Below are positions 1-14,301 of a stretch of DNA of 14,301 nucleotides, in pieces. This DNA is from Oopsacas minuta (Eukaryota > Animalia > Porifera): contig JAKMXF010000052.1 of the NCBI GenBank assembly GCA_024704765.1, positions 32,485-46,785 on the forward strand, read 5' to 3'. The notes beneath the pieces were generated by a model that ran no database searches, was not told the DNA's origin, and saw only the letters and a program-made list of their open reading frames with translations. The position numbers and the translations under genes are program-made. Every line of letters begins with the position of its first letter. Position 1 is the first letter of the stretch.

Positions 1-221
1 TCCCTAAGTAGCTAATAATGAACACAAATAAATACTCCCAGAGCCATAAGGTAGCGAATAAATTCCTAATCCCCTCCCAATGGTACTCTTTCTAACTAAT
101 AAAATATAAAGTGAGTGTGAAATTTATGCTAATTTTATGATTGGATGGAGTTTTGCTGGATTGATTATAATTAATCTTTGTAAAATGGCATATGGTTGGA
201 TTTTTTTCTTGTATTTTCTCC

Positions 222-390
222 ATTTTCGATCATAGTTCTCATTTTTGATCAAAATTCTCCAATATTTCGATCAAGGTTCGACTGGAGACATTTTAGTGGA
301 ACTTTGATCAAAATTTGCCTTTTTCATCATTTGATCAAAGTTGGACATAAGAAATTCTGATCAAAGTTCTACAAAAAATTCGATCAAAAT
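222..390. repeat. Degenerate array of 7 TT(T/C)GATCAAA(G/A)TT-like motifs
   Basis: GATCA cores at 228, 247, 269, 306, 333, 359 and 382, with spacings of 19-37 nt. Confidence 0.7.
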
Positions 391-684
391 ATACAGATGC
401 AATTGATAATACGAAAAATTCTATCTACAGTATTCTGCCCCCTTACAATTATATTTTTTTCCTGTCGATACTACTTCTGTGATTAAGATACCCGGATAGG
501 AGGATAACAGTATTAAAGAGGAGGTTCTATGTGTAGGTTTTTATCCCGGATATATTGCTGATGAATTGCGTGAATGTTGCTATAATGGAACTTATGGGCC
601 CAAAGCTTTAAGCTTTGTGATGAAAGAGACGGGGACGCGAAGTTCCGATGAGTATTTTTTGCATTATTATATGTATCTTATATA

Positions 685-1614
685 CAGGGTGCGGCAAAAG
701 TTTTGTCCCATGGTTTGACAATCAATTATACATAACTATAGTGGAATAATTGCAACCTTATAGGCCCATAATCTATATTGATGTATGTTTACTGAAGAAC
801 TAAAGCATTCTCTCTATTACTAACAAATATTTCTAATTAGAGACATGGAAGCCAAAAGGTCACAAACTTTAGAATTATTTCGTGCAGAGAGGTCCCCAGG
901 CGAGATTTTGAAAATTCTTCAGAGAAAGAATGGGGTAGAAAGTTGATATATCGTACTATCCAGAGATAAAAGGAAACTGGAAGCTTGATAGACAGAGCTC
1001 GAAGTGGTCGTCCGCGTAATGTAAGGACACGAGAACTAAAGGCGAAGATGGAGAAAAGAATCGTCCGAAATTCCCGGCGTTCCATGCGGAAAATGTCTCG
1101 TGACTTTGGAATAAGCTCTAGATCTATTGGACGCGTAGTGCACGATGACCTAGGGTTAAAGTCTCTCAAGCGCGGAAAGTTCAGATGCTTACAAAGGCCA
1201 TTAGAGTAAAGCGGCTGCAAAGAAGTCGATGTCTGTTATTGCGTGCCGCCCAATCAGTCGTTAACAAAATATTGTTCTCCGATGAGAAATTGCTCACAAT
1301 TCAAGAGGTTTCCAACCCTCAGAATGATCGTATCATCTCAAGCAGCGTCCAAGACATCCCAGAACAACTTCGATTCATACCGAGAAGGCAAAAGCCAGCT
1401 TCGGTCATGGTAGGGGGGAAATCTCTGCAAACTCCCGGACTAATCTTATTTTTGTTCCGTCTGGTGTGAAAATCAATTCGAAAACCTATCGTTAACTCAT
1501 TCTGGATCCTGAAGTGAAGGGTTTCGGTTGTAAGAACTTTGGAAATACGAGTTGGACCTTCCAGCAGGATGGAGCTCCAGCTCATACAGCTAACGCTACC
1601 CAACAGTGGTTCGA
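685..1614 (+). mobile_element. Element G: maT (DD37D-like) Tc1/mariner transposon, 3' part cut off at the N
   Basis: TA at 683-684 is followed by a TIR-like CAGGGTGCGGCAAAAGTTTTG, similar to the TIR of element E. A transposase remnant follows. The partner TIR is absent because of the N at 1615. Confidence 0.85.
845..1614 (+). pseudogene. maT-type transposase pseudogene (element G)
   Basis: Reads MEAKRSQ...RSGRPR...ILFSDEK...QNDRI...SVMV(W)G...KINSKTY...WTFQQDGAPAHTA across several frameshifts and stops. The third catalytic residue lies beyond the N, so the family call rests on the other motifs. Confidence 0.9.
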
Positions 1615-1615
1615 N
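1615..1615. other. Single N, probable contig join or assembly gap
   Basis: Unrelated elements lie on each side (G transposase, then Transib A tail) with no TSD between them. Confidence 0.8.
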
Positions 1616-1998
1616 ATTTAAAGGATGTATTTGTTCGATTGATTTCTCACAGTGATCCCATGCTGTTAATGAATCGCAAGTTTTCTATTCCAAGGCCTCC
1701 ATCTAGCCAAGGACTTAGAAGTAGCCAAGATATTTTAGTGAACACCCTTATTCGTGATCATGAAGATCATAATGATGATTAAAAGTAAACCTCTCAATCG
1801 ATTAATAGAAAATTTGGGGAATTTTCACACCTCAGATAGGTGACAATGACGTCATAACTTTGTCACCTGAAGGGAGAGAGATAAATTGATACAATTCGAT
1901 TCGTTGGGTCAAAAACCTATATGACAATAATACATTTTGAGGACCTATGTGCCATCAAAATGCCTATTTCCACATTCTGACCATTTCGTGCCACTGTG
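1616..1998 (+). mobile_element. Transib A, 3' end including the transposase C-terminus
   Basis: 1618-1782 reads LKDVFVRLISHSDPML...DD*, matching IMDIFVRLTSQSYPTL of Transib B at 9/16 positions. The end is CACTGTG (1992-1998), followed by the 5-bp TSD AAGTG (1999-2003). Confidence 0.88.
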
Positions 1999-2741
1999 AA
2001 GTGGCTTTTGTGTAACCTGAATATGTGCTTTTGTGCCCCAATAAATGTTGCTATGTGAATTTACTTGACCGTCAAGGTGGAAATGAGCTTCATCACTTGT
2101 CCACAAGTCTGACAAGAATCCCTGGCATTCCTCAACCTTGCGAATTAAAACGTTGACCATATCTAGTCTCCTGGTAATGTCAGTTGCTGTAAGCTTGTGG
2201 CATATCTGTATCCTGTAAGGAAACATGCCTAGATCTTGTTTCAGCACTCTGAGCATTGTGGTTCTCGAAATTTTGCAAACATTTCCAAAACTTTGTGAAC
2301 GCATTCAGGATGAACGTCTGGGAGATTGCTCCATTGACTTGCGGATCATGGCTATAACCTCTGGTGTGCGGATCATGGCTATAACCTCCGGTGTGCGGAT
2401 TGTAGGCCACCCACACGGGGTATGGCGCCCGTCATACTGCTTGTCTAGGTTCTTGACAGTCCCTTTACTCATAAACTTCAGAAACCACTTGAGAATAGCC
2501 GATCTGGAGGGTGTGTTATCAGTCCCAAACTGTTGTCGGTTGGTTTCATGAATTTTCAAGAAACTGGCCTTCTTCAAATACAGCTCTACGCAAAATGCTC
2601 GCTGCTGGCATGTCCACAACCTGGTAGTTGCTCTTTCAGGAGTATAGTTTGACATATCTAGAATATTAAATGGGTGCAATATATGACGTGGGATGGCATG
2701 CTCAAAAGCTAAAAGTGTTTCCAACCTTTTGAACCACCCAG
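1999..2741 (-). mobile_element. rosa (DD41D) Tc1/mariner element, 5' half with N-terminal transposase remnant (about 2655 to 2004)
   Basis: TIR 2714-2739 is the exact reverse complement of 13509-13534 (26 bp). Protein reads MSNYTPE...QRAFCVELY...LGMFPYRIQ...WTSDEAHFHLDGQVN...QKPL and stops at the Transib A TSD. Confidence 0.9.
2341..2400. repeat. In-frame 27-bp tandem duplication (IRTPEVIAM twice) in the rosa transposase
   Basis: GCGGATCATGGCTATAACCTC(T/C)GGTGT at 2341-2367 and 2368-2394, one mismatch between copies, plus a partial third copy. Confidence 0.95.
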
Positions 2742-2743
2742 CA

Positions 2744-3089
2744 CTTGATTTTAGATATCTTATGTTCACGAAATATGTACAAGATACAGTTATGGGAAAT
2801 AAGATATTTAGAATTAGCACAGTCGAAATATATAAAGTACACCAGATCAGTAACATTCGATTCTGTAATTGCTCCTACAGGTTCATTGAAATTGTGGCTA
2901 AATTTGGAAATCATAAAGCAGCAATTTTCCCATCAATATTTCGCATCTTTGAAGAAGAAACTTTACAGCTTCTAGGGTCTCAATCGCTTAGATACTTTAA
3001 ATGAGAATCATTTAAACAATAAAAAAAGAAATGAAACCATCAAATACGGAATCAATTTTTTGTCTACTCTTTGCTTCTCAACCACTGTG
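2744..3089 (-). mobile_element. Transib B, 5' end
   Basis: CACTGTG at 3083-3089 is followed by TAACG (3090-3094), the same 5-mer that precedes CACAGTA at 10570. The segment abuts the rosa TIR, whose TA TSD reads CA at 2742-2743. Confidence 0.85.
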
Positions 3090-3519
3090 TAACGTCCTAT
3101 TTGCTATTTGTCTGTAGGATATCGCCTGCTTTCTGATTATTATCTGATTGACCCTCTGCTTCAGTGCTGTGGTACGAACAAATCGTGGTCGACCAGAACG
3201 AGGCATGTCTTTCACTGTCTCATACTTGTTGTATCTTGAAATAGTCCGATAAATAAAAGATCGTGGATAATTTTTCGACCCGAGTGATTTCAATATTCCT
3301 ACTTGTCCATGTCGATTCAACCAAAGTTGGCTAATTGCAGACCTCTTAGCCTCAATAGGTTTAATAAGACACAGTATTACAGTAAGCTTGGAACCAATGT
3401 TGTAGTATGATATATAATAGAGTCACATAGAATAGTTGAATCAGAAATGACATCGAAAATGGTTGCGTAATAAAGTTTCTGCAATTCGAATTTCGTTGCA
3501 GAACTTTTGGCTCACTTTG
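3090..3519 (-). mobile_element. Element E (maT, DD37D-like), 5' part with N-terminal transposase remnant
   Basis: TIR 3495-3519 matches 8377-8401 at 22/25 positions; TA at 3520-3521. Protein reads (I)EAKRSAI...FIYRTISRY...RSGRPR...RQIANRTL and continues at 10564 once Transib B is removed. Confidence 0.9.
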
Positions 3520-3700
3520 TATGAAAGTTAGTTATCTTAACTTTTAAGAACTGTACATGACAAGCCGTCTGGTTCCAGATTCACATGTCCCCGACGTGAG
3601 GGGTCCATATCCCTTCAGAATATGTACATTTACGCCTATGGAAAAAGTTTACGTGTTGTCTTACAAGGTTGGTAGGTTTATCCATGTGAAAAATCTAGCT

Positions 3701-3719
3701 GTTAAAACCTGGTTTTAAC
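3701..3719. repeat. 19-bp palindrome GTTAAAACC-T-GGTTTTAAC
   Basis: Perfect 9-bp arms with a 1-nt centre. A nearby 11-bp inverted repeat lies at 3749-3759 / 3825-3835. Confidence 0.9.
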
Positions 3720-4419
3720 CGTCCTATCTACAACCTCTTGTGTGGACAAAACTGGACAAACCCCTATATCAATTCAGGTTTTGTTTGGTTATGTCCAGGT
3801 AATTTATTGAATATATATTAGGCCTTGTCCAGTTTACTAGTGTTTTAAATAATCTTTGTTTTCTTATGTTCTATCAGGTTTCCAAATTATAGTAGAACCC
3901 CCATAAACTAACACTGGAAGTCCTGCAAAATCTGACAATTTTATATACCAATAAGCGTTGGACACTGCAGAGTAATACACTGCATGATAAGGCGATTTTG
4001 ATAAATCGACAGATTTTATATTTATCAAGAGTATGTGCGACATTAGCACCGATACTGTCGCACGCATTGTTCAATTTCATGAAGTTTTGGTTTTGTCCGG
4101 TGCTCACCAGATTTTGTTCACTGTCCCCTCCAAACCTCAATCCAGAATATATTTATCCTGCTCTACCAGCTCGATCGAGAAAGGTTTTTTTCAAATTGTA
4201 TAGTTGTATTGTTATCCTGTACCGTAATTATATTTGATTTGTAACGTGATTATGTATGCTACTGTATTAATTATTATTTAAATCTTTGTTTGAGTCCTCT
4301 CCTTCTATTACAATAATTCCCAATAAATTGTTATTAGTGTTGTGAATAGCTTCATGTCATTATCAAACAATTTACCTTATCCACAAGTGTTCCAAAAGTT
4401 CAAGTCAAAGACTATATAA

Positions 4420-4479
4420 TGTGAGGTTTGCAATTAACATCGTGGCTATGCGAAATATCGAAGGCACTTGGTTGCTCAT
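4420..4479 (+). pseudogene. Degenerate C2H2 zinc-finger remnant, probably the N-terminus of the recombinase gene
   Basis: CEVCN*HRGYAKYRRHLVAH (C-x2-C-x11-H-x3-H) with one in-frame stop, on the same strand as the recombinase. Confidence 0.45.
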
Positions 4480-5059
4480 GTTAATAATGGTAAATTCCTT
4501 TGCAGAAAGTATACAAAATATTGTTCAAGTTCGCCAAACAAGATGTGATACAAAATATAAAAATTCAACAAAATTACAGTCAGGATAAAGATGTAATTTT
4601 CGTAATGAATTGAGTGTAGAATTTAAACGTATAGTATTGGATATTAAACTACATCTTGTCACAGTTCATAAGTTATGCAAATTCAGTCAAATTTGAAGAG
4701 TTAGAGTCAGAAGTGTTGAGACAAAAGCAATTGAAAGACTTACAAAATTCTCTATAATGGACAATATGGAAATGAATAATATTGTAAACCCATTGAATAA
4801 TTCAACGATACGATCAGAATAAATGCCAGATGATTCACTTGTGTATTGCAATGAATTCGATTATCAGAGTGTACTCCACATTTGAATATATCACCATTTG
4901 AGATCAGTTCTGGAGATGAATTTGATTCGGAAACTATTACATCAGACGTACTCTTAACACTTCTAGGACATGTAAGTTGGGTTGTTGGTCAAGGAAGGTA
5001 AGAAGTTAATAGAAGTTTTCCATGATAACATTGATCGTTGCTCAGCTGCTTCAGGTTTA

Positions 5060-6718
5060 TAGATCGTGAGCTGATAATTCAAGAATTCCAATCATTTTTA
5101 CTTCACAAGGGGAGGCGGTGGTAGAAAAACACGCCAGTTAAAGGTGATATGTGTCAATTTGATCTGTAGTTAATGAACGTGGTTGGCATCAGCTGTGGGA
5201 TCCTAATCAACTCAATCACTATGTCAGTTCTGCTACATGTAGTCCGTCAACAATGTATTGTCGTTTGCGTGTATACGAAAGATTTATTCGCTTTCTGAGA
5301 ATGCAGATACCTTCACTGCTACCTACTGTAGAACAGTTGAAAGGAATAGATTCTATGTTGTGCTATTTAAAAGAAGCAATTGGAAAAGATCGTCATTTGC
5401 GAATAAAGGATACGATGGCAGTTAGTCGAGAACGTATGCCAAAGTCTTTTGATGTATTACGTTTATGGCATTCACGTCGTGGATTGGTTGAAGTTACACA
5501 GCAATTTGTACATATTGACGAGTAACGAAGGATATCAGTGAGTTTGTGTTTATGCAACTGCATAATTATCTTATAGTTAAAATTCTAATAGCAACCGCTC
5601 AACGTTCTGGAATAATTGAGGGAATGCTGATTAAAGAGGTGTTAGATACAGAAGGTAATTCAAAATGTGACAACCTCGTATATATTTACGTTGCAAATCA
5701 TAAGACAGGATCTCTTCAAGCTGCTATTATTTATCTCGATGTTGAAATCTATTTTTACCTTGTCACTATGATTACGACAGTTCTTCCCTTGTTATCATCT
5801 ATTAGCGATATCTCTTCGCGTGATGAAAAGAACTGTCATGTCTTTCAGACATGGACTTCTGATAGATTACGTACAAGTAGCATAACCACTTGTTTGCGTT
5901 CAGGATTGAAACATTTTGGTATTCATGATCCCGATGCCTGCCCTACGAATTATCGTAAAGCAGCCTCTACATTGATCAGCATGCACAAACCTTCAATGCA
6001 AGAATCACTTAGTCAATTTATGTGTCATGCTCGTTCAACAACTGAGCGACACTACCGTCATCATGTGTCCCATAGGGGATTGTCCTCGGGTTTCAATGAA
6101 CTGGAGAAATGTCAAGCTCTGCCTAGCAATGACGATTTTAGTACCACATCTGAGAAGAGTCTTAGTAACCGATCTTCTAAGCCTACTACTCAAATGGTTA
6201 CACATTCTGATAATGTCACTGAACAAATTAATGAGCCAAAAAGTTCTAATGCTGTTTAAGATGATCATATTGTTGACTCGGATAATGATTTGGACGATAC
6301 TTTATCAGGCATTTCCATGTGTCCATGGATATCAATAGTGATTCAGAAAGATCATGTCTGATTGGTGATTCAGCTTTTCAGTTCAGTACATGTACACCTT
6401 CTGAAATCTCACATGTTTCTGTTCCCTCTTAGCCTTTAAATGACCCCCGATACACTTGTAAGCGAAATGGTGAAAAAGCATATTTGTGGATCAATTCCAA
6501 GAAGATACTTTTTTTTCTCAACTTTCGGTAATTTGATTGATAATGCATTACACCATATTCCTGTTGCAGCTAGCGAGGTTTAGTGTTAGCTTGGAGTACA
6601 GAACAATTTTTCCCTTATGGATTAACTTAGTTAACAAGTTTGGCCAATCTTTGGCCTTGAAAAAAGTTACAGATAAGATACGGACGTTTGCTCGAAATAA
6701 TCGAGTGAAGAAGTAAAC
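5060..6718 (+). pseudogene. Tyrosine recombinase pseudogene, Crypton-like
   Basis: ORF 5546-6259 carries TAQRSG (R), HKTG (K), TNYRK (HxxR-like), FMCH (H) and TERHY (Y). Upstream broken frames read FL..RGGGGRK and PSTMYCRLRVYERFIRFL, resembling a core-binding domain. An acidic linker and a KKVTDKIRT tail run to about 6718. Outer boundaries are approximate. Confidence 0.8.
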
Positions 6719-7034
6719 AATGCGAAGTTAGGAATTGTGTAGGATTTTTAACTGGTTAGCAGACGTCTAGGTCTGTAACGCTAGNCGAATATAGACTACA
6801 CAATATATAGGAGCGGGAAAGAGTATACAATTTATGACAATATATTTGTGTGGTCGAATACTTTTGTCCATTGACTGTATATTTGTTTCCATAGATAGGG
6901 GCATAAATATATGTAATATCCCAATGCTGTCCAGCGTCAAAATTGAATTATAATTTTGGACGCCACCATTTTGGCTTGAAGGACCATTTGCAAATTGACA
7001 ATGGCCTTACCGACAGGACAGCTGAATTAGTTTA

Positions 7035-8374
7035 CAGGGTGTTTCATAATTGATGCCCTATTCAGATTTAACATACTTTATAGAATACCCATTAGTACTA
7101 TTTTACTAGTTGGACTATTTAGCATATATCTCAATAATATGACTGCGTAGTAGCTTTTTACGTATCTTGCTTCATTCTAAACTATATTTTTCATTAGCAT
7201 ATTTGAATAATTGTATTCTATTAGTTGATACAAAGAAAATGGTCAAAGAACAGACTATTCAAACTCGTAATAGAGCAATTGGGATTTTGCAGGGTGGGTT
7301 GACCAAGAAATCGGTTGCTCAACGGATTGGAGTTAATATCCGAACAGTTCGTCGTTGGTGGTTATGCTTTTTTGGAGGTCAGTAGCTCAAAAACATAAGG
7401 GGTCGTGGCCAAAAACATCCGTCCCAATCCCAGCAAAGTTAGTCATCACTTCCACCCAGAAAAAACACCAATCAACCAAATCCATCTCTCGGAAGTTGAA
7501 ATCCAAGGGATATTCAATCTCATGCAGCATCGTATATCGCCATTTACGGAATACCCTTAACTTCAAGGCATATAAACGCCAGCAGCAACCCAAATTAACC
7601 GATAAACAGAAAGAAAACCGATTGAAATTCTGTAAAGCATGTAAAGACTGGACAACAGAGGTTTGGAAAAGGGTTATTTTCTCTGATGAATGCCCCTTTG
7701 AACTTATCCATGCACCAAATCGGTAGAATGATCGAATTTGGGCACCTGACAAGTCAAATATTCAACCAGTAGAACTGGTGAAACACCCTACTAAAATACA
7801 GGTGTGGGGGATGATCTCTTACGCAGCTGTCTCCGATTTGCACATGATAGATCCTGGACAAACAATAACTGGAGATTACTATGTGAACGAAAATCTGACA
7901 AAGACTCTTTGTGTCACATATAAATGAAAACGAAAAACTGGATCCACTATCCAGAGAAAGATAGTACACAACATGTCTCATTCAATTTTCCAACAAGACT
8001 GTGCACCAGCCCATCACTCGAAAAAGTCTCAAGAATGGTTAAAAAATAATCTGCCTTCGTTCTGGGAGAATGGTATTTGGCCTGGCAACTCGCCAGATCT
8101 TAATCCAATAAAATGTATGGGCAATAATGAAAAGTGAGATGGAAACTATGGCTCCTCCCAACAATCTGAAAATGCTTGAAAATAACATAAAACTGGCCTG
8201 GCCAAGACTTTCGTGTGATATTATAGAGTCGTTATATAATGGGATGCCAAATAGAGTAAAGAAGTGCATCAAACTACATGGTAGTTACATTACAAAGTGA
8301 ATTAATTGATTGGTTGCTATTAGTGCTGCGTTAATTCATTGTGTATGATAGGGCATCAATTATGAAACACCCTG
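7035..8374 (+). mobile_element. Element F: full-length (1340 bp) Tc1-like transposon with DD37E spacing
   Basis: Perfect 26-bp TIRs CAGGGTGTTTCATAATTGATGCCCTA (7035-7060 / 8349-8374) and TA TSDs at 7033-7034 and 8375-8376. Confidence 0.97.
7239..8300 (+). pseudogene. Transposase pseudogene of F
   Basis: MVKEQ...VIFSDE...NDRIW...VWGMIS...FQQDCAPAH...WPGNSPDLNPI(E). There are 37 residues between the second D and the inferred E, which was lost in a 1-nt deletion. Several stops and frameshifts. Confidence 0.92.
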
Positions 8375-8376
8375 TA

Positions 8377-8868
8377 CAGGGTGAGCCAAAAGTTTTGCAA
8401 CAAACTTAACATTATTTAATACTCAATGTATGATGCTATGTATTAAGAAATTTCGTCATATATGAATTAAATGAATATATTAATTAGTTCTAAATCCTTG
8501 TTCCTAAAATATGAGAGCTAATTCATTTCAAATCTCTTGCCTCTCGCTTTGATGTACATTTTCAATCATTCAGGGAATTTTTGCATGCTAGCGCTGCTTC
8601 CTCCAGGTCTAAATCATTCCATGAACGAAGAATTGCCCTTTTCAAAGCCTGAACTGACTTATGAATGTGGTTGTTTATTATTGCTTCCATTCTACCCGAC
8701 AAATAGTAATCACAGGGGTTGAGGTCTGGGGTTGAATGGGGCTATTCATCCTTGTTCAAAAAATTAGGGATGTTGTTAGAAAGCTAGTCTTGATTAATCT
8801 TAACTGTATAACTGGGCTCGTCCTGCTGAAACAACCAATTTTCTCCATTCATGAAGGTATTACTTATA
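8377..8868 (-). mobile_element. Element E, 3' part (catalytic C-terminus and TIR)
   Basis: TIR CAGGGTGAGCCAAAAGTTTTGCAAC at 8377-8401. Protein reads WLFQQD...TPDLNPCDYYL...GKRFE. Spacing between the last two Ds is 36 as observed, inferred to be 37 before a small deletion. Confidence 0.9.
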
Positions 8869-10199
8869 CAGTGTGTCCCATAAAAAACTGAATAGGTAAA
8901 TCATTTCAAAGAATATTATTATTCGAAGATTTTTCCAATGTTTTCCGAAATATCTAAAGTAATTTAGTGGTCCTTCAGTATTTTATCTTATAACTCCTAC
9001 TTTCCTGAACCAGCTGTCATCTTTTGGGCATGGAAGCCCATTAAGGTCGAAGAAAATCTGTATCTATCGCCTCCCTAATTTTCAATAGTTGTTATTTGAG
9101 GTCTCGAATATTTTTAGGGTTGCGTTTGATTAATTCTAACTTAATCCAGGCGAACAAATTTCAATAGGTTTAACATCTGGACTTTGACTTGGCCAGTCTA
9201 TTCTGTTTTTGTTTCATATTTTTGTCAATCCATGCCTTGGTTAGTTTGGCTGTGTAATTTGGGTTATTATCCTACACCAAAAACCACTCAGAACGATGAA
9301 AAACAGTTGCTTGTGTTATCATGTGCCCTCTCTAGTATATTCACAAGGAGAGCTGCTGTGAGTATTTCTTGGAAAATACATAGTGAAAACGTTCCTACAG
9401 ACAAAAAGCTGCCCAAATGTTGACTTTTTGGGTATGTTCCACTGTTGTTCGCAGCCTCTCAGTACCTTCCTTGGTCCACATGCGAATTCTCCCACGTGCG
9501 ATTCAAATCGAAGCCTCATCGGCGAATATAGCATGTTGCCAATCATTTTTAAGATTTTTCTCTCCTCATTCAAGTCGTGATATTCGATTTATCTTAGATA
9601 GTAGAGGAATGGGGCTAGGGTAGGGCTTCGTATACCTTAACTTCTTCAAAGCACGTGCAACCGTATTCTTTGGGGTGGTAACTGGACACTTATCTGCCAT
9701 AGCTCTAAGAGAAATGTAACGGGTTCTCCGAATTTGTTGTGCGATACTGTTCGTTATTAATGGGAGTAATTTCCCTGGCCTCCCACTCCCTTTTCTTCGT
9801 TTAATTGGCAAACATTCACTTATTCGGGATTTTAGGTTGTAAACCGTTGATAATGAGACACCTACAATTCTAGATATTCCTTAACTGAGTGTTTATTCCC
9901 CTTTGGAAGTATAATTGCGTGTTCCCTTTTCTCAGTCTGAGACATGGTGAAAAATAAATGCTATTAAATCAGAATGAACATATAGATATAAATGATTATA
10001 GCAAAAGTGTTTGTGTCATGATGATGCAATAATAAATATGTGCAAAGATTTTTATAATATATGGGAAATGTATTCCCAATAAAAACATGACTTAATGGAA
10101 TATAAAATTTTAAGTAGATATGTCTAATACAAACTATGAAACTCATAAAATGCTAGATGTAAGATAATTGAATAAATTCAGATTTTATGGGACATACTG
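8869..10199 (-). mobile_element. Element D: full-length (1331 bp) Tc1-family transposon inserted in E; transposase pseudogene about 9945 to 8975
   Basis: Imperfect TIRs CAGT(G/A)TGTCCCATAAAA(AA/T)CTGAAT, TA TSDs at 8867-8868 and 10200-10201. Motifs GSGRP, IFADEAS, DNNPNYTAK and DWPSQSPDVKPIE (about DD34-36E; a frameshift prevents an exact count). Removing D restores KHVLPISNTF in E. Confidence 0.92.
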
Positions 10200-10569
10200 T
10201 AGGCAGAACATGTTTAGATAGAATCAGTTTCTGCTATAAATGGTGTTAATTTTGGCGTCCTCTGGAACAAAAACCATGCTTGTTTTCCCTTTTGCCGATA
10301 TTCCAGCCCATACCATCACAGACTTTGGATGTAAGGTTTTTGCAACATGTTTAAATTCCCTAGGTATGTTTTCACGCGATATAGATTAACACACGCGAGT
10401 TTTGGCTCTTGTATTTTTCCTCGATGCTCCATAGTTTCTCCTCTGAAAATACGATATTTTCATGATCAACATTTTTGAGACGGGTCACGAGCATATGACA
10501 ACGTTGCAATCTTTTCCCTATTATGAGTGGAGTTGAAGCTTTGGTTTTAGTTTTTGTTAGAAATTAACG
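10200..10569 (-). mobile_element. Element E, middle part
   Basis: KRLQRC...NIVFSEEK...HPKSVMVWAGIS.KGKT..VFVP...KIN. Bounded by the TA TSD of D and the TAACG TSD of Transib B (10565-10569). Confidence 0.9.
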
Positions 10570-10942
10570 CACAGTAGTTTGATAGGGCAGTTAGTAAAGA
10601 ATAGCTATTTGGTGTGAGATAACAATGTGAATGTACTATTTACATATAGATTATTAAATATAAGGAACCAATACATCTTGTCATAACAAGTATATGGCCT
10701 AAAATTTCCAAGTTATGATGTCATTGACATATGTGAAACTTTAAATTTTCTTCAGTAAATACATTTTACTCGACTTTATTGCCATAAAATCTATTAATTA
10801 CAAATGGGTTATCCGTATTTGGCAATCACCTTAAACTTAGCACTTTGGTTCTAGGGCTTGTATTTATAGAGTTATGAGGTCATACTTATGATGGAATTTA
10901 TCTTATTGATTTACAAAATATACACTATATTCATACTTAAGT

Positions 10943-13056
10943 TCATGATAGGCAATCTGTATTGGAGGTTAAAGTCGTGAATAAAGTTTGTATACTAGTT
11001 TTCTGATTGTTCATAGCATTGCAGCATTTAGATCTCGTTGTGTGTCCAGATTGACCACATCGTTCACAAGTCAAAATTGTTCGATAGTTTACTAAGGTTG
11101 GGTAACTTTGAGAGGTTAATCTGACGAAGATATCCATAATATTGGTCTCAAAACTAACTTTACGAGCTAAATTCTCCCGATATTTTCTAACTGATTTGGT
11201 GCATGATTCTTTGCCTTCTGCTAAAAATGCCTTTAAGCCACAGCTGGAATTCGACTCACGTATTAATTCCTCGGAATGGGCTAAGAGCTTGTGCAGGGTT
11301 GGAGTCATGCTAGCCCAGGGGAAAGAATCTAAGATTACAAGGTAGGTATCCTTACACAATTTTCCCAATTCCAAAATGTTAGCCTTGTGACTTGAATTGA
11401 ATACCCGAAGAATGGCTGAAAGCTGAGTATGTATCTTTGATAAGATTAGGCGATATTGTATTGCTACAGTTGATAGAATGCATTCAAGGTATTCAGTTTC
11501 ATCAGAAAAGGCTCTTCTAGCAACATTCCCTGTTGAGGTGGTTCCACCGCTAGAATTAGGCTGGTCAACCTTTAATCCTGTCTTCTCCTGAATAAATGTT
11601 TGAAGGAATTTCATTGACTCCTTGATAACTGGTGAAGTTGGGGACCAGGTAAACTTTTCGATGCGTAGATGATATACCAGCAAATTAAACCACCTAAAAT
11701 TGGTTTAATTGTGTGAAGATAAATTCTCAATGATCAATGGAGTGCTAGATTACTTACCTAAATACGCCTGTGTAAGAATGAAGCTGAGATGCTGGATGCA
11801 TGTTAATCTCTGAAATTGGTTGATGAGTTAACTTGAAGCGTTCATTAGTCGAAAGAGCAAAGAACGACTCAATGTCATCAATTTGTGTAAATAACTCGAT
11901 TGCATCTGTGATATTTCTGTTGATGGGGAACCTTTCAAGAACTTAATTCCGGTCCTTCAGATCTTTATACGTGGAAGTGCACATCTGACAACTGGCTCCT
12001 CCAGCTCCAGAGAGAATGGCTGCCATCTTCCCATCAAACATTGAGCGATAATATCGACATTGACAACACCATTTTCTAAAGGAATCCCATTTTGCAACAT
12101 CGCTGTATCGGGATTAATCATAGTTTCCATGAAGGTACGAATATTTTCTTCGCATTCTGTCGCAGCGCAGAGAAAATAGGTCTTTGAGAGAAGTGTGGAT
12201 TAGGGGATTTATTCTGCCAAACAATCCTGTTAGTTACAGTGTGGATGGAGATGGGCTTGAAACCAAACAGAATGAAGGTTTGGTGAAAGTATTAGTTGTC
12301 TGCTGGTTGTAGATAGTGTGACAACCAGAACCATCTAAGCCATCTGCGATTTTAAATGTGAGCGGGAATTCTTCACTTGTGGGCGATCTACCATTGAGAA
12401 TATTCTTTCCAGGGTTTTCTGAACTTGAAGACAATATGGTGCGTGTGTGCCTATTGGTTTACCTGGATTAGGATACAAAGTTATACTGGAACGCGAAATC
12501 ATGACATCTCTCAGATTAGCAAACTTACTGTAAGATGGGAATCTATATTGTCTGGTAGAAGTGTGTGACGTAGTTGAGTGTATTTTCGTCTGCCCACTTG
12601 AAGTAAATCCAGTAGGAATAAGGCTTTATCAACTGGAACATGCTTGTTACTGAGGTTACAGAATCTTCCACTGACAATAATCTCTTTGGCTACCGTAGCA
12701 ACCTGACAATCATTCTCCTCATTTGTTCAATAGTTGTAATGAGAGTGTTGCAATGCTCATTTCTGTAGTACTCAATAATTGAGAGTGACTAAATGCATTT
12801 CTAGCAGACTTGATAATCGAATACGCTATTGTTGCAGAGATAGATCATCAAGATGCTTTCTATGACTAACTGAATGAATGGGAACTTCACCATCATCAGA
12901 AGACGACTCTAGTACATCACAAACATGATTTTTCTTTAACTCAGGTTTCTTGGGAATGTTAGAATGCCGCCATTCTCCTTCTAAACAATCTAAAGATCTC
13001 TTCGCCTTCTTGAATCTGTCACGAATTCTTAACAGCAACGTTTCCAAGAGTTTCAT
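10943..13056 (-). pseudogene. Transib/RAG1-core-like transposase pseudogene
   Basis: Motifs GLDGSG (first D), WQNKSP...RPIF, MFDGKM (second D), SCQMC and LHKLLAH (zinc ligands), GNVARRAF, AEGKES (catalytic E) and a C-terminal CERCGQSGHTTRSKCC. Multiple stops and frameshifts upstream of the open frame 10943-11683. The true start may lie further upstream. Confidence 0.9.
11694..11757 (-). other. 64-nt spliceosomal intron in the Transib B transposase gene
   Basis: AG|GTAAGT...ATTTTAG|G. Removal fuses LHSYTGVF-R-WFNLLVYHL in frame, resembling the Transib LH.W.R.F..LL motif. Confidence 0.8.
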
Positions 13057-13506
13057 ATAATCAGTCTATTTCAAAGTGTTCTTTGAAATATTTCGTCGTT
13101 TTTAAGACACAATTAATATTGTCTTTCAGGATTCTGACCTATTCGAGGAGGGACTTTGGAAAAGTTAACTCTTGTGTCATTATTTTCAAGAAATTCCGAA
13201 AAATATGTTGTATTATTCAGTAGATTATATATATAAGTCACTATAATAAATTTCAAGAAAGAAATTCAATACTATTTCATTCCATTGTTGCAGTATGCTA
13301 AAATGGGAATTTCCTAGCAACGAAAAGTTGTAATTGAATGTCAATGAAAATTATTGGCTGCGCACTATTTCGGGTTTTGTAGCTTTAGATTATGTTTTTA
13401 GGAATCGTAACGCGTGTATCCGATTCATTTTGCGCTGTTGCTTTGTGCTGTTTATTTTTCCTGACACTTTAAGTATTCCTCTTTGTAAAATTCTGCATGG
13501 ATTTTA

Positions 13507-14181
13507 CCGGGTGGTTCAAAAGGTTGGAAACACTATATGCATTTTCCCTTCATTCCCCCAATATTTCGATGAACATCAATGTAACATATTTAATGTCTAC
13601 TCAAAATCTAATTTTAAATATGTGCTAAGTTTAAGCATCCAGGCTCCATAGGAAGTGGTGTTTTAGGGCATCTGCTCGAGGTGCCTACCGTTTACCTACT
13701 GACATTTGCGTAGTCTCAGGATAAAATTCTGCATAACATTATGGAGAACATCTCTTTTTATGGCCCCTATCTCCTCTATGATCTTTTCCTTGAGTTGGGC
13801 AATGTTCCTGGGCTTTGATGCATAGACCCGATCCTTGAGAAACCCCCATAACAAATAATCTGAGGGACTCAAGTCTGGAGAAAGGGGTGGCCATTCGATC
13901 GCACACTTTTTACTGATAATCCGCGACTTAAAATGATCTTTCAACCACTTGATTGTGCTGTTCGACGTATGGGGAGTAGCTCCATCCTGCTGCAAATACT
14001 GCCTAGTCCTTCTTGTGCCACATGTAGGATCTAGCTCCTCCCAAAACCTCTCCAAGATTACTATGTATCGCTCATAGTTCACAGTTACAGTTATCCCATT
14101 TTCATTTTTAAAATTAGAACGGTTCAATAATTTTCTTTCCTGATAGTGCTGCCCAAACACTCACTTTTGGGGAGTGAAGTG
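13507..14181 (-). mobile_element. rosa (DD41D) element, 3' half with catalytic C-terminus
   Basis: TA followed by TIR CCGGGTGGTTCAAAAGGTTGGAAACACT. Protein reads LHSPKVSVWA...VTVN.ERY...QQDGATPH...WPPLSPDLSPSD, with 41 residues between the last two Ds. TSD AAGTG at 14177-14181. Confidence 0.92.
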
Positions 14182-14301
14182 CACAGTGGCACGGCATATG
14201 GAAATAGGTGAAAAAAATATAACCTCAAATTGCTTTATAGTGTTGATACTTGAATTCAGCACCCCCACAAACCTCGGAAAACATTTGACATCTCTACAAT
14301 A
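14182..14301 (+). mobile_element. Transib A, 5' end (runs off the window)
   Basis: CACAGTGGCACG...TGGAAATAGG mirrors the end at 1963-1998 and is preceded by the same AAGTG TSD. Confidence 0.88.

What the first reader, a model, noticed from the sequence alone, without database searches (positions are those of the whole stretch)
1616..14301. The whole four-level transposon nest is circularly permuted
Seen directly: four split elements have matching halves in swapped order. Transib A: TSD AAGTG at 14177-14181 and 1999-2003; joining restores rosa QKPL-HSPKV. rosa: TIRs at 13507 and 2741. Transib B: TSD TAACG at 10565-10569 and 3090-3094; joining restores E ANRTL-IS. Element E: TIRs at 8377 and 3519, both with TA. 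Moving 1616-3521 to after 14301 gives a perfectly concentric nest. The segment is therefore one unit (over 12.7 kb plus the unseen interior of A) of a head-to-tail tandem repeat, an opened circle, or a mis-ordered assembly. Ordinary insertion alone cannot produce this order. Which explanation holds is inference.
Basis: partly seen in the sequence, partly recalled or inferred. Interest (0 to 1): 0.88.

Follow-up and report, generated by a model that had tools for sequence, protein, structure and literature searches.

The report
Transposon nest scrambled by assembly error
The swapped halves of the four nested jumping genes are real in the database record, but they exist only because the pieces of this sponge genome scaffold were written in reverse order; in the animal the nest is almost certainly an ordinary one.

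Summary
All four split elements have matching ends, matching target-site duplications and restorable reading frames, in swapped order.

The cause is the assembly, not biology. The window is the last 14,301 nt of Oopsacas minuta scaffold JAKMXF010000052.1. It consists of three contigs joined by single Ns: X 1-1614, Y 1616-6784 and Z 6786-14301. Z ends the scaffold, 120 nt inside Transib A.

- **Reads contradict the Y|Z join.** Independent contigs of the reads do not cross N6785. Y's end runs on into other sequence, and Z starts inside a very high-copy repeat.
- **The whole scaffold is reversed.** Across its eight pieces, the end of a later piece repeatedly overlaps the start of the piece written before it: 319 nt at 100%, 69 nt at 100%, and 135 nt at 98.5%. 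No overlap exists in file order.
- **A second element is rebuilt the same way.** Joining X to the earlier piece T restores a complete 1,310-bp mariner.
- **The gap sizes fit.** The two long N runs (1547 and 934) both match a mate-pair orientation error, giving one apparent insert of about 3.9-4.0 kb.

The true order is therefore Z, a gap inside Transib A, then Y, which makes the nest concentric. Nothing supports a tandem repeat or a circle.

The parts
1..1614 (+). Contig X. It holds 682 nt of flank and then the 5' 932 nt of a mariner-like element that begins at 683. The rest of this element is not in the window. It lies in contig T, record 25950-30937, which is written before X in the scaffold.
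   Evidence: X's last 319 nt equal T's first 319 nt at 100%. X+T gives a 1,310-bp element with right TIR CAGAACTTTTGCCGCACCCTGTA and an ORF reading ...WPPSCPDLYPMDY.
1615..1615 (.). Single N: a scaffold join that is not a true adjacency (X|Y).
   Evidence: X demonstrably continues in contig T, not in 1616 onward.
1616..1998 (.). Right terminal 383 nt of Transib A, and the start of contig Y.
   Evidence: It ends ...CGTGCCACTGTG, the inverse of CACAGTGGCACG at 14182.
1999..2003 (.). Target-site duplication AAGTG of Transib A, right copy.
2004..2741 (-). rosa-type mariner, N-terminal half of the transposase on the minus strand.
   Evidence: TIR arm at 2704-2739. The frame continues into 14176 downward.
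2742..3089 (.). Right part of Transib B.
   Evidence: It ends CACTGTG at 3083-3089 beside TAACG.
3090..3094 (.). Target-site duplication TAACG of Transib B, right copy.
3095..3521 (-). Mariner-like element E, N-terminal part, with its TIR and TA.
   Evidence: Inverted arm at 3489-3521. HTH_32 hit. Frame restored.
3522..6784 (+). Host or backbone DNA to the right of the nest. It carries gene LOD99_10704 (window 5301-6259), a candidate tyrosine recombinase. Contig Y ends at 6784.
   Evidence: P0001 is 100% identical and its gene position comes. Word depth is flat at about 42 in X1. Read contigs run past 6784 into TAC, then a 43-nt repeat of 6714-6756, then up to about 500 nt that are not on the laid stretch.
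6785..6785 (.). Single N: the false join (Y|Z) that creates the apparent permutation.
   Evidence: No contig in three runs bridges it, and both sides run on into other sequence.
6786..6880 (+). 3' end of a very high-copy Tc1/mariner-type repeat. This is the start of contig Z and the true start of the scaffold.
   Evidence: Summed word depth is about 97,000, against about 42 alongside. There are many different continuations after 6879-6883. A second copy in contig R carries the same 30 nt that reads show before 6786.
6881..7032 (.). Host DNA to the left of the nest. Before the F and E insertions it was contiguous with 3522 onward through one TA.
   Evidence: TA flanks of F and E.
7033..8376 (+). 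Mariner-like element F, with perfect 29-nt TIRs. Its right TA is also E's left TA.
   Evidence: Inverted repeat I2 is 100% complementary. HTH_Tnp_Tc3_2 hit. Word depth is 2-4 times its neighbours.
8377..10564 (-). Element E, C-terminal part (8377-8866 and 10202-10564), interrupted by mariner-like element G (8867-10201).
   Evidence: Inverted repeats I3 and I12. Removing G restores ...NGENWLFQQD.
10565..10569 (.). Target-site duplication TAACG of Transib B, left copy.
10570..13506 (-). Left part of Transib B, with its RAG1-like transposase gene.
   Evidence: It begins CACAGTAG. Weak RAG1 Pfam hit. A 420-aa gene is called at window 10943-13056.
13507..14176 (-). rosa-type mariner, C-terminal half.
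   Evidence: TIR arm at 13509-13544. DDE_3 hit.
14177..14181 (.). Target-site duplication AAGTG of Transib A, left copy.
14182..14301 (.). Left terminal 120 nt of Transib A. This is the end of contig Z and of the scaffold record.
   Evidence: It begins CACAGTGGCACG. The record ends at 46785, which is window 14301.

Best explanation
The permutation is an assembly artefact. In scaffold JAKMXF010000052.1 of the Oopsacas minuta assembly GCA_024704765.1, the contigs keep their orientation but are written in reversed order. Equivalently, each contig is flipped in place.

The window holds three such contigs in file order X, Y, Z. In the genome the order is Z, then the unassembled interior of Transib A, then Y, then a gap, then X. 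Read that way the locus is ordinary:
- Mariner-like elements F and E sit side by side at one TA in host DNA.
- E carries the mariner-like element G and Transib B.
- Transib B carries a rosa-type mariner.
- That mariner carries Transib A.

The likely cause, which is inferred, is a library-orientation error during SSPACE scaffolding with the Nextera mate-pair data. Either true outward-facing mate pairs were treated as inward-facing, or inward-facing contaminant pairs were treated as mate pairs. Either error swaps contig order while keeping orientation.
For: 1. **Breakpoints are contig ends.** The permuted segment starts at 1616, just after the N at 1615. It ends at 14301, which is the end of the 46,785-nt record. 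Its only internal N is at 6785.
2. **Reads reject the Y|Z join.** In all three runs one contig at local depth passes 6784 without branching. It continues with TAC, then 43 nt repeating 6714-6756, then up to about 500 further letters. Contigs entering 6786 come from ...TATTCTATGCAAATTACTAGATTGCAGCTA. That sequence is the body of the same high-copy repeat seen in contig R.
3. **Overlaps run in reversed order.** X's end equals T's start (319 nt, 100%). T's end equals R's start (69 nt, 100%). Q's end matches P's start (135 nt, 98.5%). None of the seven joins overlaps in file order.
4. **X to T rebuilds a complete mariner** of 1,310 bp, with its TIR and the C-terminal WPPSCPDLYPMDY motif.
5. **The chain X to T to R rules out tandem repeats of file-order blocks.** Only a reversal fits it.
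6. **Gap arithmetic agrees.** For a swapped pair, the written gap should equal 2I minus the true gap minus the two contig lengths. The 1547-N gap gives I = 3915 and the 934-N gap gives I = 3978. Four of the five single-N joins have summed contig lengths large enough to predict a negative gap, which fits a single N. The fifth, X|Y, does so only if the true Y-to-X gap is at least about 1.1 kb (lengths; my arithmetic).
7. **The methods fit.** The paper reports a Nextera Mate Pair library, and SSPACE, pilon and GapFiller run on all selected Illumina reads.
Against: - No read or contig was seen to span Transib A from 14301 to 1616. The Z-to-Y adjacency therefore rests on the four-fold transposon restoration and on the pattern in the rest of the scaffold.
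- Three joins show no overlap in either order: P to piece 0, R to Q, and Y to X.
- The orientation-error mechanism is inferred from two gap sizes and the methods text, not from the scaffolder's logs.
- Logan contigs show presence, not absence, so a rare junction form could have been dropped.
- No single-copy baseline was available, so depth alone cannot exclude a twofold duplication.
Confidence: 0.94

Rival explanations
1. A real head-to-tail tandem duplication of a unit longer than 12.7 kb (nest plus spacer), collapsed by the assembler. The window would run from mid-A in one copy to mid-A in the next.
For: The halves match exactly. Depths of the E-right, backbone and E-left parts are similar, about 27-45, as expected if all belong to one repeated unit.
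Against: - The required unit-to-unit junction runs through N6785, and no contig joins the two sides.
- The single contig leaving 6784 does not branch.
- All breakpoints coincide with contig ends.
- The same swap affects unrelated neighbouring contigs, and the X to T to R chain cannot be produced by tandem repeats.
- Allele-specific contigs sit at about half the local depth (18-25 against about 42), as in plain diploid single-copy DNA.
Confidence: 0.03
2. An extrachromosomal or re-integrated circle, for example one made by the tyrosine-recombinase (Crypton-like) gene in the spacer, opened inside Transib A.
For: The spacer encodes LOD99_10704. Elements of that kind are thought to move through circles (general knowledge).
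Against: - The circle-closing junction is the unsupported N6785 join.
- Pfam finds no recombinase domain at E <= 0.01.
- The scaffold-wide reversal explains the order without any circle.
Confidence: 0.01
3. A local mis-join at a collapsed repeat, for example through multi-copy element F or the high-copy repeat at 6786, rather than a scaffold-wide order reversal.
For: Z starts in a repeat with summed word depth about 97,000, and F has 2-4 times the neighbouring depth. Repeats commonly cause false links.
Against: This is also an artefact, so the verdict would not change. It does not explain why three other contig pairs overlap in reversed order, or why two gap sizes give the same constant.
Confidence: 0.02

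Closest known systems
Mis-scaffolding from mate-pair library orientation (outward-facing mate pairs confused with inward-facing paired-end reads) in SSPACE-type scaffolders
   Same: Contig order is swapped while orientation is kept. The breakpoints lie at N joins. Unclosed or negative gaps are left as a single N. The positive gap sizes fit 2I - g - LA - LB with I of about 3.9-4.0 kb. The paper used Nextera Mate Pair data with SSPACE and GapFiller.
   Different: The library settings actually used are not stated in the text I read, so this mechanism is inferred. Whether other scaffolds are affected was not tested: the two other loci I sampled had no Ns.
Nested insertion clusters of DNA transposons (Tc1/mariner and Transib)
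   Same: After re-ordering, each element has paired TIRs and a duplicated target site (5 bp for the Transibs, TA for E, F and G). Each interrupts the reading frame of its host element cleanly.
   Different: Nothing unusual remains. The interior of Transib A is unassembled, so its length and coding capacity are unknown.
Tandem duplications or circular DNA carrying transposons
   Same: Both would also give circularly permuted element halves in a linear record.
   Different: The defining junction is not supported by reads, and depth gives no sign of extra copies.

Membership tests
Scaffold order/orientation artefact | Breakpoints of the anomaly coincide with contig ends or gap characters | tested here: met
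   Ns lie at 1615 and 6785. The window is preceded by a 1547-N run, and 14301 is the end of the record.
Scaffold order/orientation artefact | Independent read contigs do not support the written join | tested here: met
   No contig bridges 6785 in the three runs, and both sides continue into other sequence. All three runs come from one sample, possibly the one that was assembled.
Scaffold order/orientation artefact | Sequence continuity is restored by the alternative order | tested here: met
   Overlaps of 319 nt, 69 nt and 135 nt appear in reversed order and none in file order. One mariner (X+T) and the four-level nest (Z then Y) are restored.
Scaffold order/orientation artefact | Direct evidence for the true adjacency 14301 to 1616 (reads spanning Transib A) | not tested
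Tandem duplication | Reads crossing the junction from the end of one unit to the start of the next | tested here: not met
   a contig passes 6784 unbranched into other sequence, and none enters 6786 from Y.
Tandem duplication | Depth about twice single-copy | tested here: inconclusive
   Depth is flat at about 42 with allele-like contigs at 18-25, but no single-copy baseline was available.
Transib (elements A and B) | 5-bp target-site duplication and CACAGTG-type termini | tested here: met
   AAGTG and TAACG are each duplicated, and all four ends begin CACAGT.
Transib (elements A and B) | RAG1-like DDE transposase | tested here: inconclusive
   For B, the RAG1 Pfam hit has E = 8.9e-4 at 17.9 bits, below the cut-off of 25. 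For A, the interior is missing.
Tc1/mariner (rosa-type element, E, F, G, X) | TA target site, 25-35-nt TIRs, DDE/D transposase with an HTH N-terminus | tested here: met
   Domain hits are HTH_Tnp_Tc3_2 for F and G, HTH_32 for E and DDE_3 for rosa. Motifs PLHSPKVSVW, WLFQQD and WPPSCPDLYPMDY appear. The right flank of the rosa element reads CA, not TA.

The most novel reading that the evidence does not exclude
Besides the scaffold error, the animal might really carry a second, head-to-tail or circular copy of the nest plus its recombinase-bearing flank. In that case some molecules would join Y's end to Z's start through a gap that holds the high-copy repeat.
Probability: 0.03. Interest if true: 0.5.

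Novelty: not a real feature. Interest (0 to 1): 0.07.

Why it matters
There is no biological novelty here. The value is practical. At least this scaffold of the only public Oopsacas minuta assembly has its contigs in reversed order. Such an error manufactures 'circularly permuted' transposons, genes with exons out of order, and segments bracketed by short identical direct repeats.

The scan's own notes list 26 'permuted' items in this genome, and another item bracketed by a 122-bp direct repeat. Those notes are unchecked. Each should be tested against this artefact before any biological reading is given.

Tried and rejected
- **X continuing past N1615.** I suspected that 1616-1800 continued mariner X, because of a weak 'PPSS' resemblance by eye. 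tblastx showed no homology there, and the true continuation turned up in contig T.
- **Exact look-up of ten window ORFs** in the protein collection found nothing. A homology search was needed to reach the record.
- **Two other O. minuta loci**, L005 and L006, were fetched to see whether the reversal is assembly-wide. Neither contains an N, so they gave no test.
- **An ungapped overlap script** missed the Q-to-P overlap because it contains one indel. BLAST found it.
- **Depth as a copy-number test** was inconclusive for lack of a baseline.
- **Pfam** gave no family for the backbone ORFs, so the 'Crypton-like' label stays untested.
- **The A. vastus genome paper** has no mention of misassembly in the O. 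minuta assembly in the passages I searched.
Full report
**1. The observation**

The window has Ns only at 1615 and 6785. The claimed landmarks are all present.

| Element | Evidence |
|---|---|
| Transib A | AAGTG at 14177-14181 and 1999-2003; both ends read CACAGTGGCACG |
| Transib B | TAACG at 10565-10569 and 3090-3094; ends begin CACAGT |
| rosa-type mariner | 36-nt inverted arms at 13509-13544 and 2704-2739, 89% complementary |
| Element E | 33-nt arms at 8375-8407 and 3489-3521, 85% complementary, each beside TA |

Joining the halves restores canonical transposase sequence. For rosa it reads ...QKPLHSPKVSVWAALS. For E it reads ...YRQIANRTLISNKN. The Pfam hits on the pieces are weak and below the curated cut-offs, but consistent: DDE_3 for rosa, RAG1 for B, HTH_32 for E, and HTH_Tnp_Tc3_2 for two further mariner-like elements.

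Those two elements were not in the finding.

**2. Where the window lies**

A homology search with the 237-aa ORF of the spacer found a 100% identical protein, LOD99_10704 of Oopsacas minuta. Its contig is JAKMXF010000052.1 of GCA_024704765.1, 46,785 nt long. The window is record 32485-46785. It follows a 1547-N run directly and ends at the end of the record.

I fetched the rest of the record. It has eight pieces:

| Piece | Record coordinates | Gap written after it |
|---|---|---|
| piece 0 | 1-6684 | N |
| P | 6686-16329 | N |
| Q | 16331-22911 | N |
| R | 22913-25015 | 934 N |
| T | 25950-30937 | 1547 N |
| X | 32485-34098 | N |
| Y | 34100-39268 | N |
| Z | 39270-46785 | end of record |

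The 'permuted unit' therefore starts at the first base of contig Y and ends at the last base of contig Z. Its interior join is the N between them.

**3. What the reads say about N6785**

I laid Logan contigs of three runs on 3000-8900. All three runs come from one sample and one study.
- No contig bridges 6785.
- In each run one contig, at the local depth (40.8, 50.1 and 262.9), passes 6784 without branching. It continues with TAC, then 43 nt repeating 6714-6756, then more sequence, up to about 500 nt in X1, that is not on the laid stretch.
- Contigs entering 6786 come from ...TATTCTATGCAAATTACTAGATTGCAGCTA.
- The bin holding 6786-6880 has a summed word depth of about 97,000, against about 42 alongside. 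Many different continuations follow 6879-6883. Z therefore begins inside a very high-copy Tc1/mariner-type repeat.
- A second copy of that repeat in contig R carries the same 30 nt before the matching point, 27 of 30 identical. Reads entering 6786 therefore come from the repeat's own body, not from Y.

The written join Y|Z is not a sequence adjacency.

**4. The whole scaffold is reversed**

I compared the terminal 400 nt of all pieces.
- X's last 319 nt equal T's first 319 nt, at 100%.
- T's last 69 nt equal R's first 69 nt, at 100%.
- Q's last 134 nt match P's positions 6-140, at 98.5%.

In every case the end of the later-written piece overlaps the start of the earlier-written piece. No pair overlaps in file order.

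Merging X with T rebuilds a complete 1,310-bp mariner, with right TIR CAGAACTTTTGCCGCACCCTGTA and the C-terminal motif WPPSCPDLYPMDY. N1615 is therefore a false adjacency too.

The chain X to T to R cannot come from tandem repeats of file-order blocks. Only a reversal of order with orientation kept fits it. Under that reversal Z precedes Y, and the four split elements become a plain concentric nest.

The overlap of 6691-6825 with 22778-22911 also explains the neighbouring note s1-315901, 'joining 22911 to 6826'. That note gave me the lead.

**5. Likely cause (inferred)**

The genome paper reports Illumina paired-end and Nextera Mate Pair libraries. It describes a hybrid SPAdes assembly, then SSPACE, pilon and GapFiller run on all selected Illumina reads (PMC10280926).

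From general knowledge, confusing the inward and outward read orientation of a library makes a scaffolder swap two contigs while keeping their orientation. For a true order A then B with gap g, the written gap becomes 2I - g - LA - LB. Equivalently, it is the assumed insert plus the contaminant insert, minus g, LA and LB.
- The 1547-N gap gives 2I = 1547 - 319 + 1614 + 4988 = 7830.
- The 934-N gap gives 2I = 934 - 69 + 4988 + 2103 = 7956.
- So I is 3.92 and 3.98 kb from two independent gaps (lengths).

Four of the five single-N joins have summed contig lengths well above that constant. They predict negative gaps, which fits a single N; that such pipelines write a single N for an unclosed or negative gap is from my memory of them. 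For X|Y the same arithmetic predicts a true Y-to-X gap of at least about 1.1 kb. That fits the more than 540 nt of unplaced sequence that follows 6784 in the reads.

**6. What is really there**

In corrected order the locus reads as follows:
- the end of a high-copy repeat (6786-6880);
- host DNA (6881-7032);
- TA, then F, then TA;
- element E, which contains G and Transib B; B contains the rosa-type mariner, and that mariner contains Transib A;
- TA;
- host DNA with LOD99_10704 (3522-6784).

Transib A is represented by 120 nt on its left and 383 nt on its right, and its interior is unassembled. This is an ordinary cluster of nested insertions.

**7. What remains open**

- No read was seen to span Transib A.
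- Three joins show no overlap in either order.
- Copy number could not be calibrated.
- Whether other scaffolds share the fault was not tested, because the two sampled loci had no Ns.

The scan's notes list many 'permuted' items in this genome. They are unchecked, but they make an assembly-wide fault worth testing. I put a real tandem duplication or a circle at about 4% together.

Noticed in passing
record JAKMXF010000052.1, all seven N joins (L001-L004, L007): The contig order of the whole scaffold appears reversed relative to contig orientation. Two N-run lengths (1547 and 934) give the same constant, about 7.8-8.0 kb, under a library-orientation error. The fault may be assembly-wide, and it could explain the many 'permuted' notes on this genome.
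   Followed up: partly
window 6786-6880; also record 24622-24729 (contig R, inverted): This is the end of a Tc1/mariner-type repeat, ...GGTCGAATACTTTTGTCCATTGACTGTATA. Its summed word depth is about 97,000, against about 42 for neighbouring DNA. It is probably a MITE-like family with a very high copy number.
   Followed up: partly
window 6714-6784: Read contigs continue after 6784 with TAC and a second copy of 6714-6756. This indicates a tandem repeat with a period of about 74 nt, and the assembled contig stops there.
   Followed up: no
window 5301-6259 (gene LOD99_10704): This 271-aa hypothetical protein looks by eye like a tyrosine recombinase (AQRSG ... HKTG ... NYRKAA ... MCHARSTTERHY), but it has no Pfam hit at E <= 0.01. 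It has 49-72% identical relatives on long ENA contigs of up to 834 kb, so it belongs to a family.
   Followed up: partly
window 4949-5047 and 7169-7238: Read contigs of the same sample replace these stretches of 99 and 70 nt with sequence too different to align. They also differ from the record at many single sites at full depth. These are allelic differences or polishing errors in the record.
   Followed up: no
window 7033-8376: Mariner-like element F has perfect 29-nt TIRs and 2-4 times the neighbouring word depth, so it is a young multi-copy family. Its reading frame is nevertheless broken by several stops.
   Followed up: no
window 14182-14230 and 1950-1998: The two ends of Transib A share CACAGTGGCACG and a TGGAAATAGG box, placed at different distances from the tip. 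Another note on this window discusses this asymmetry.
   Followed up: no
window 2741-2743 and 13505-13506: The rosa-type mariner is flanked by TA on one side and CA on the other, so its TA duplication is not intact.
   Followed up: no
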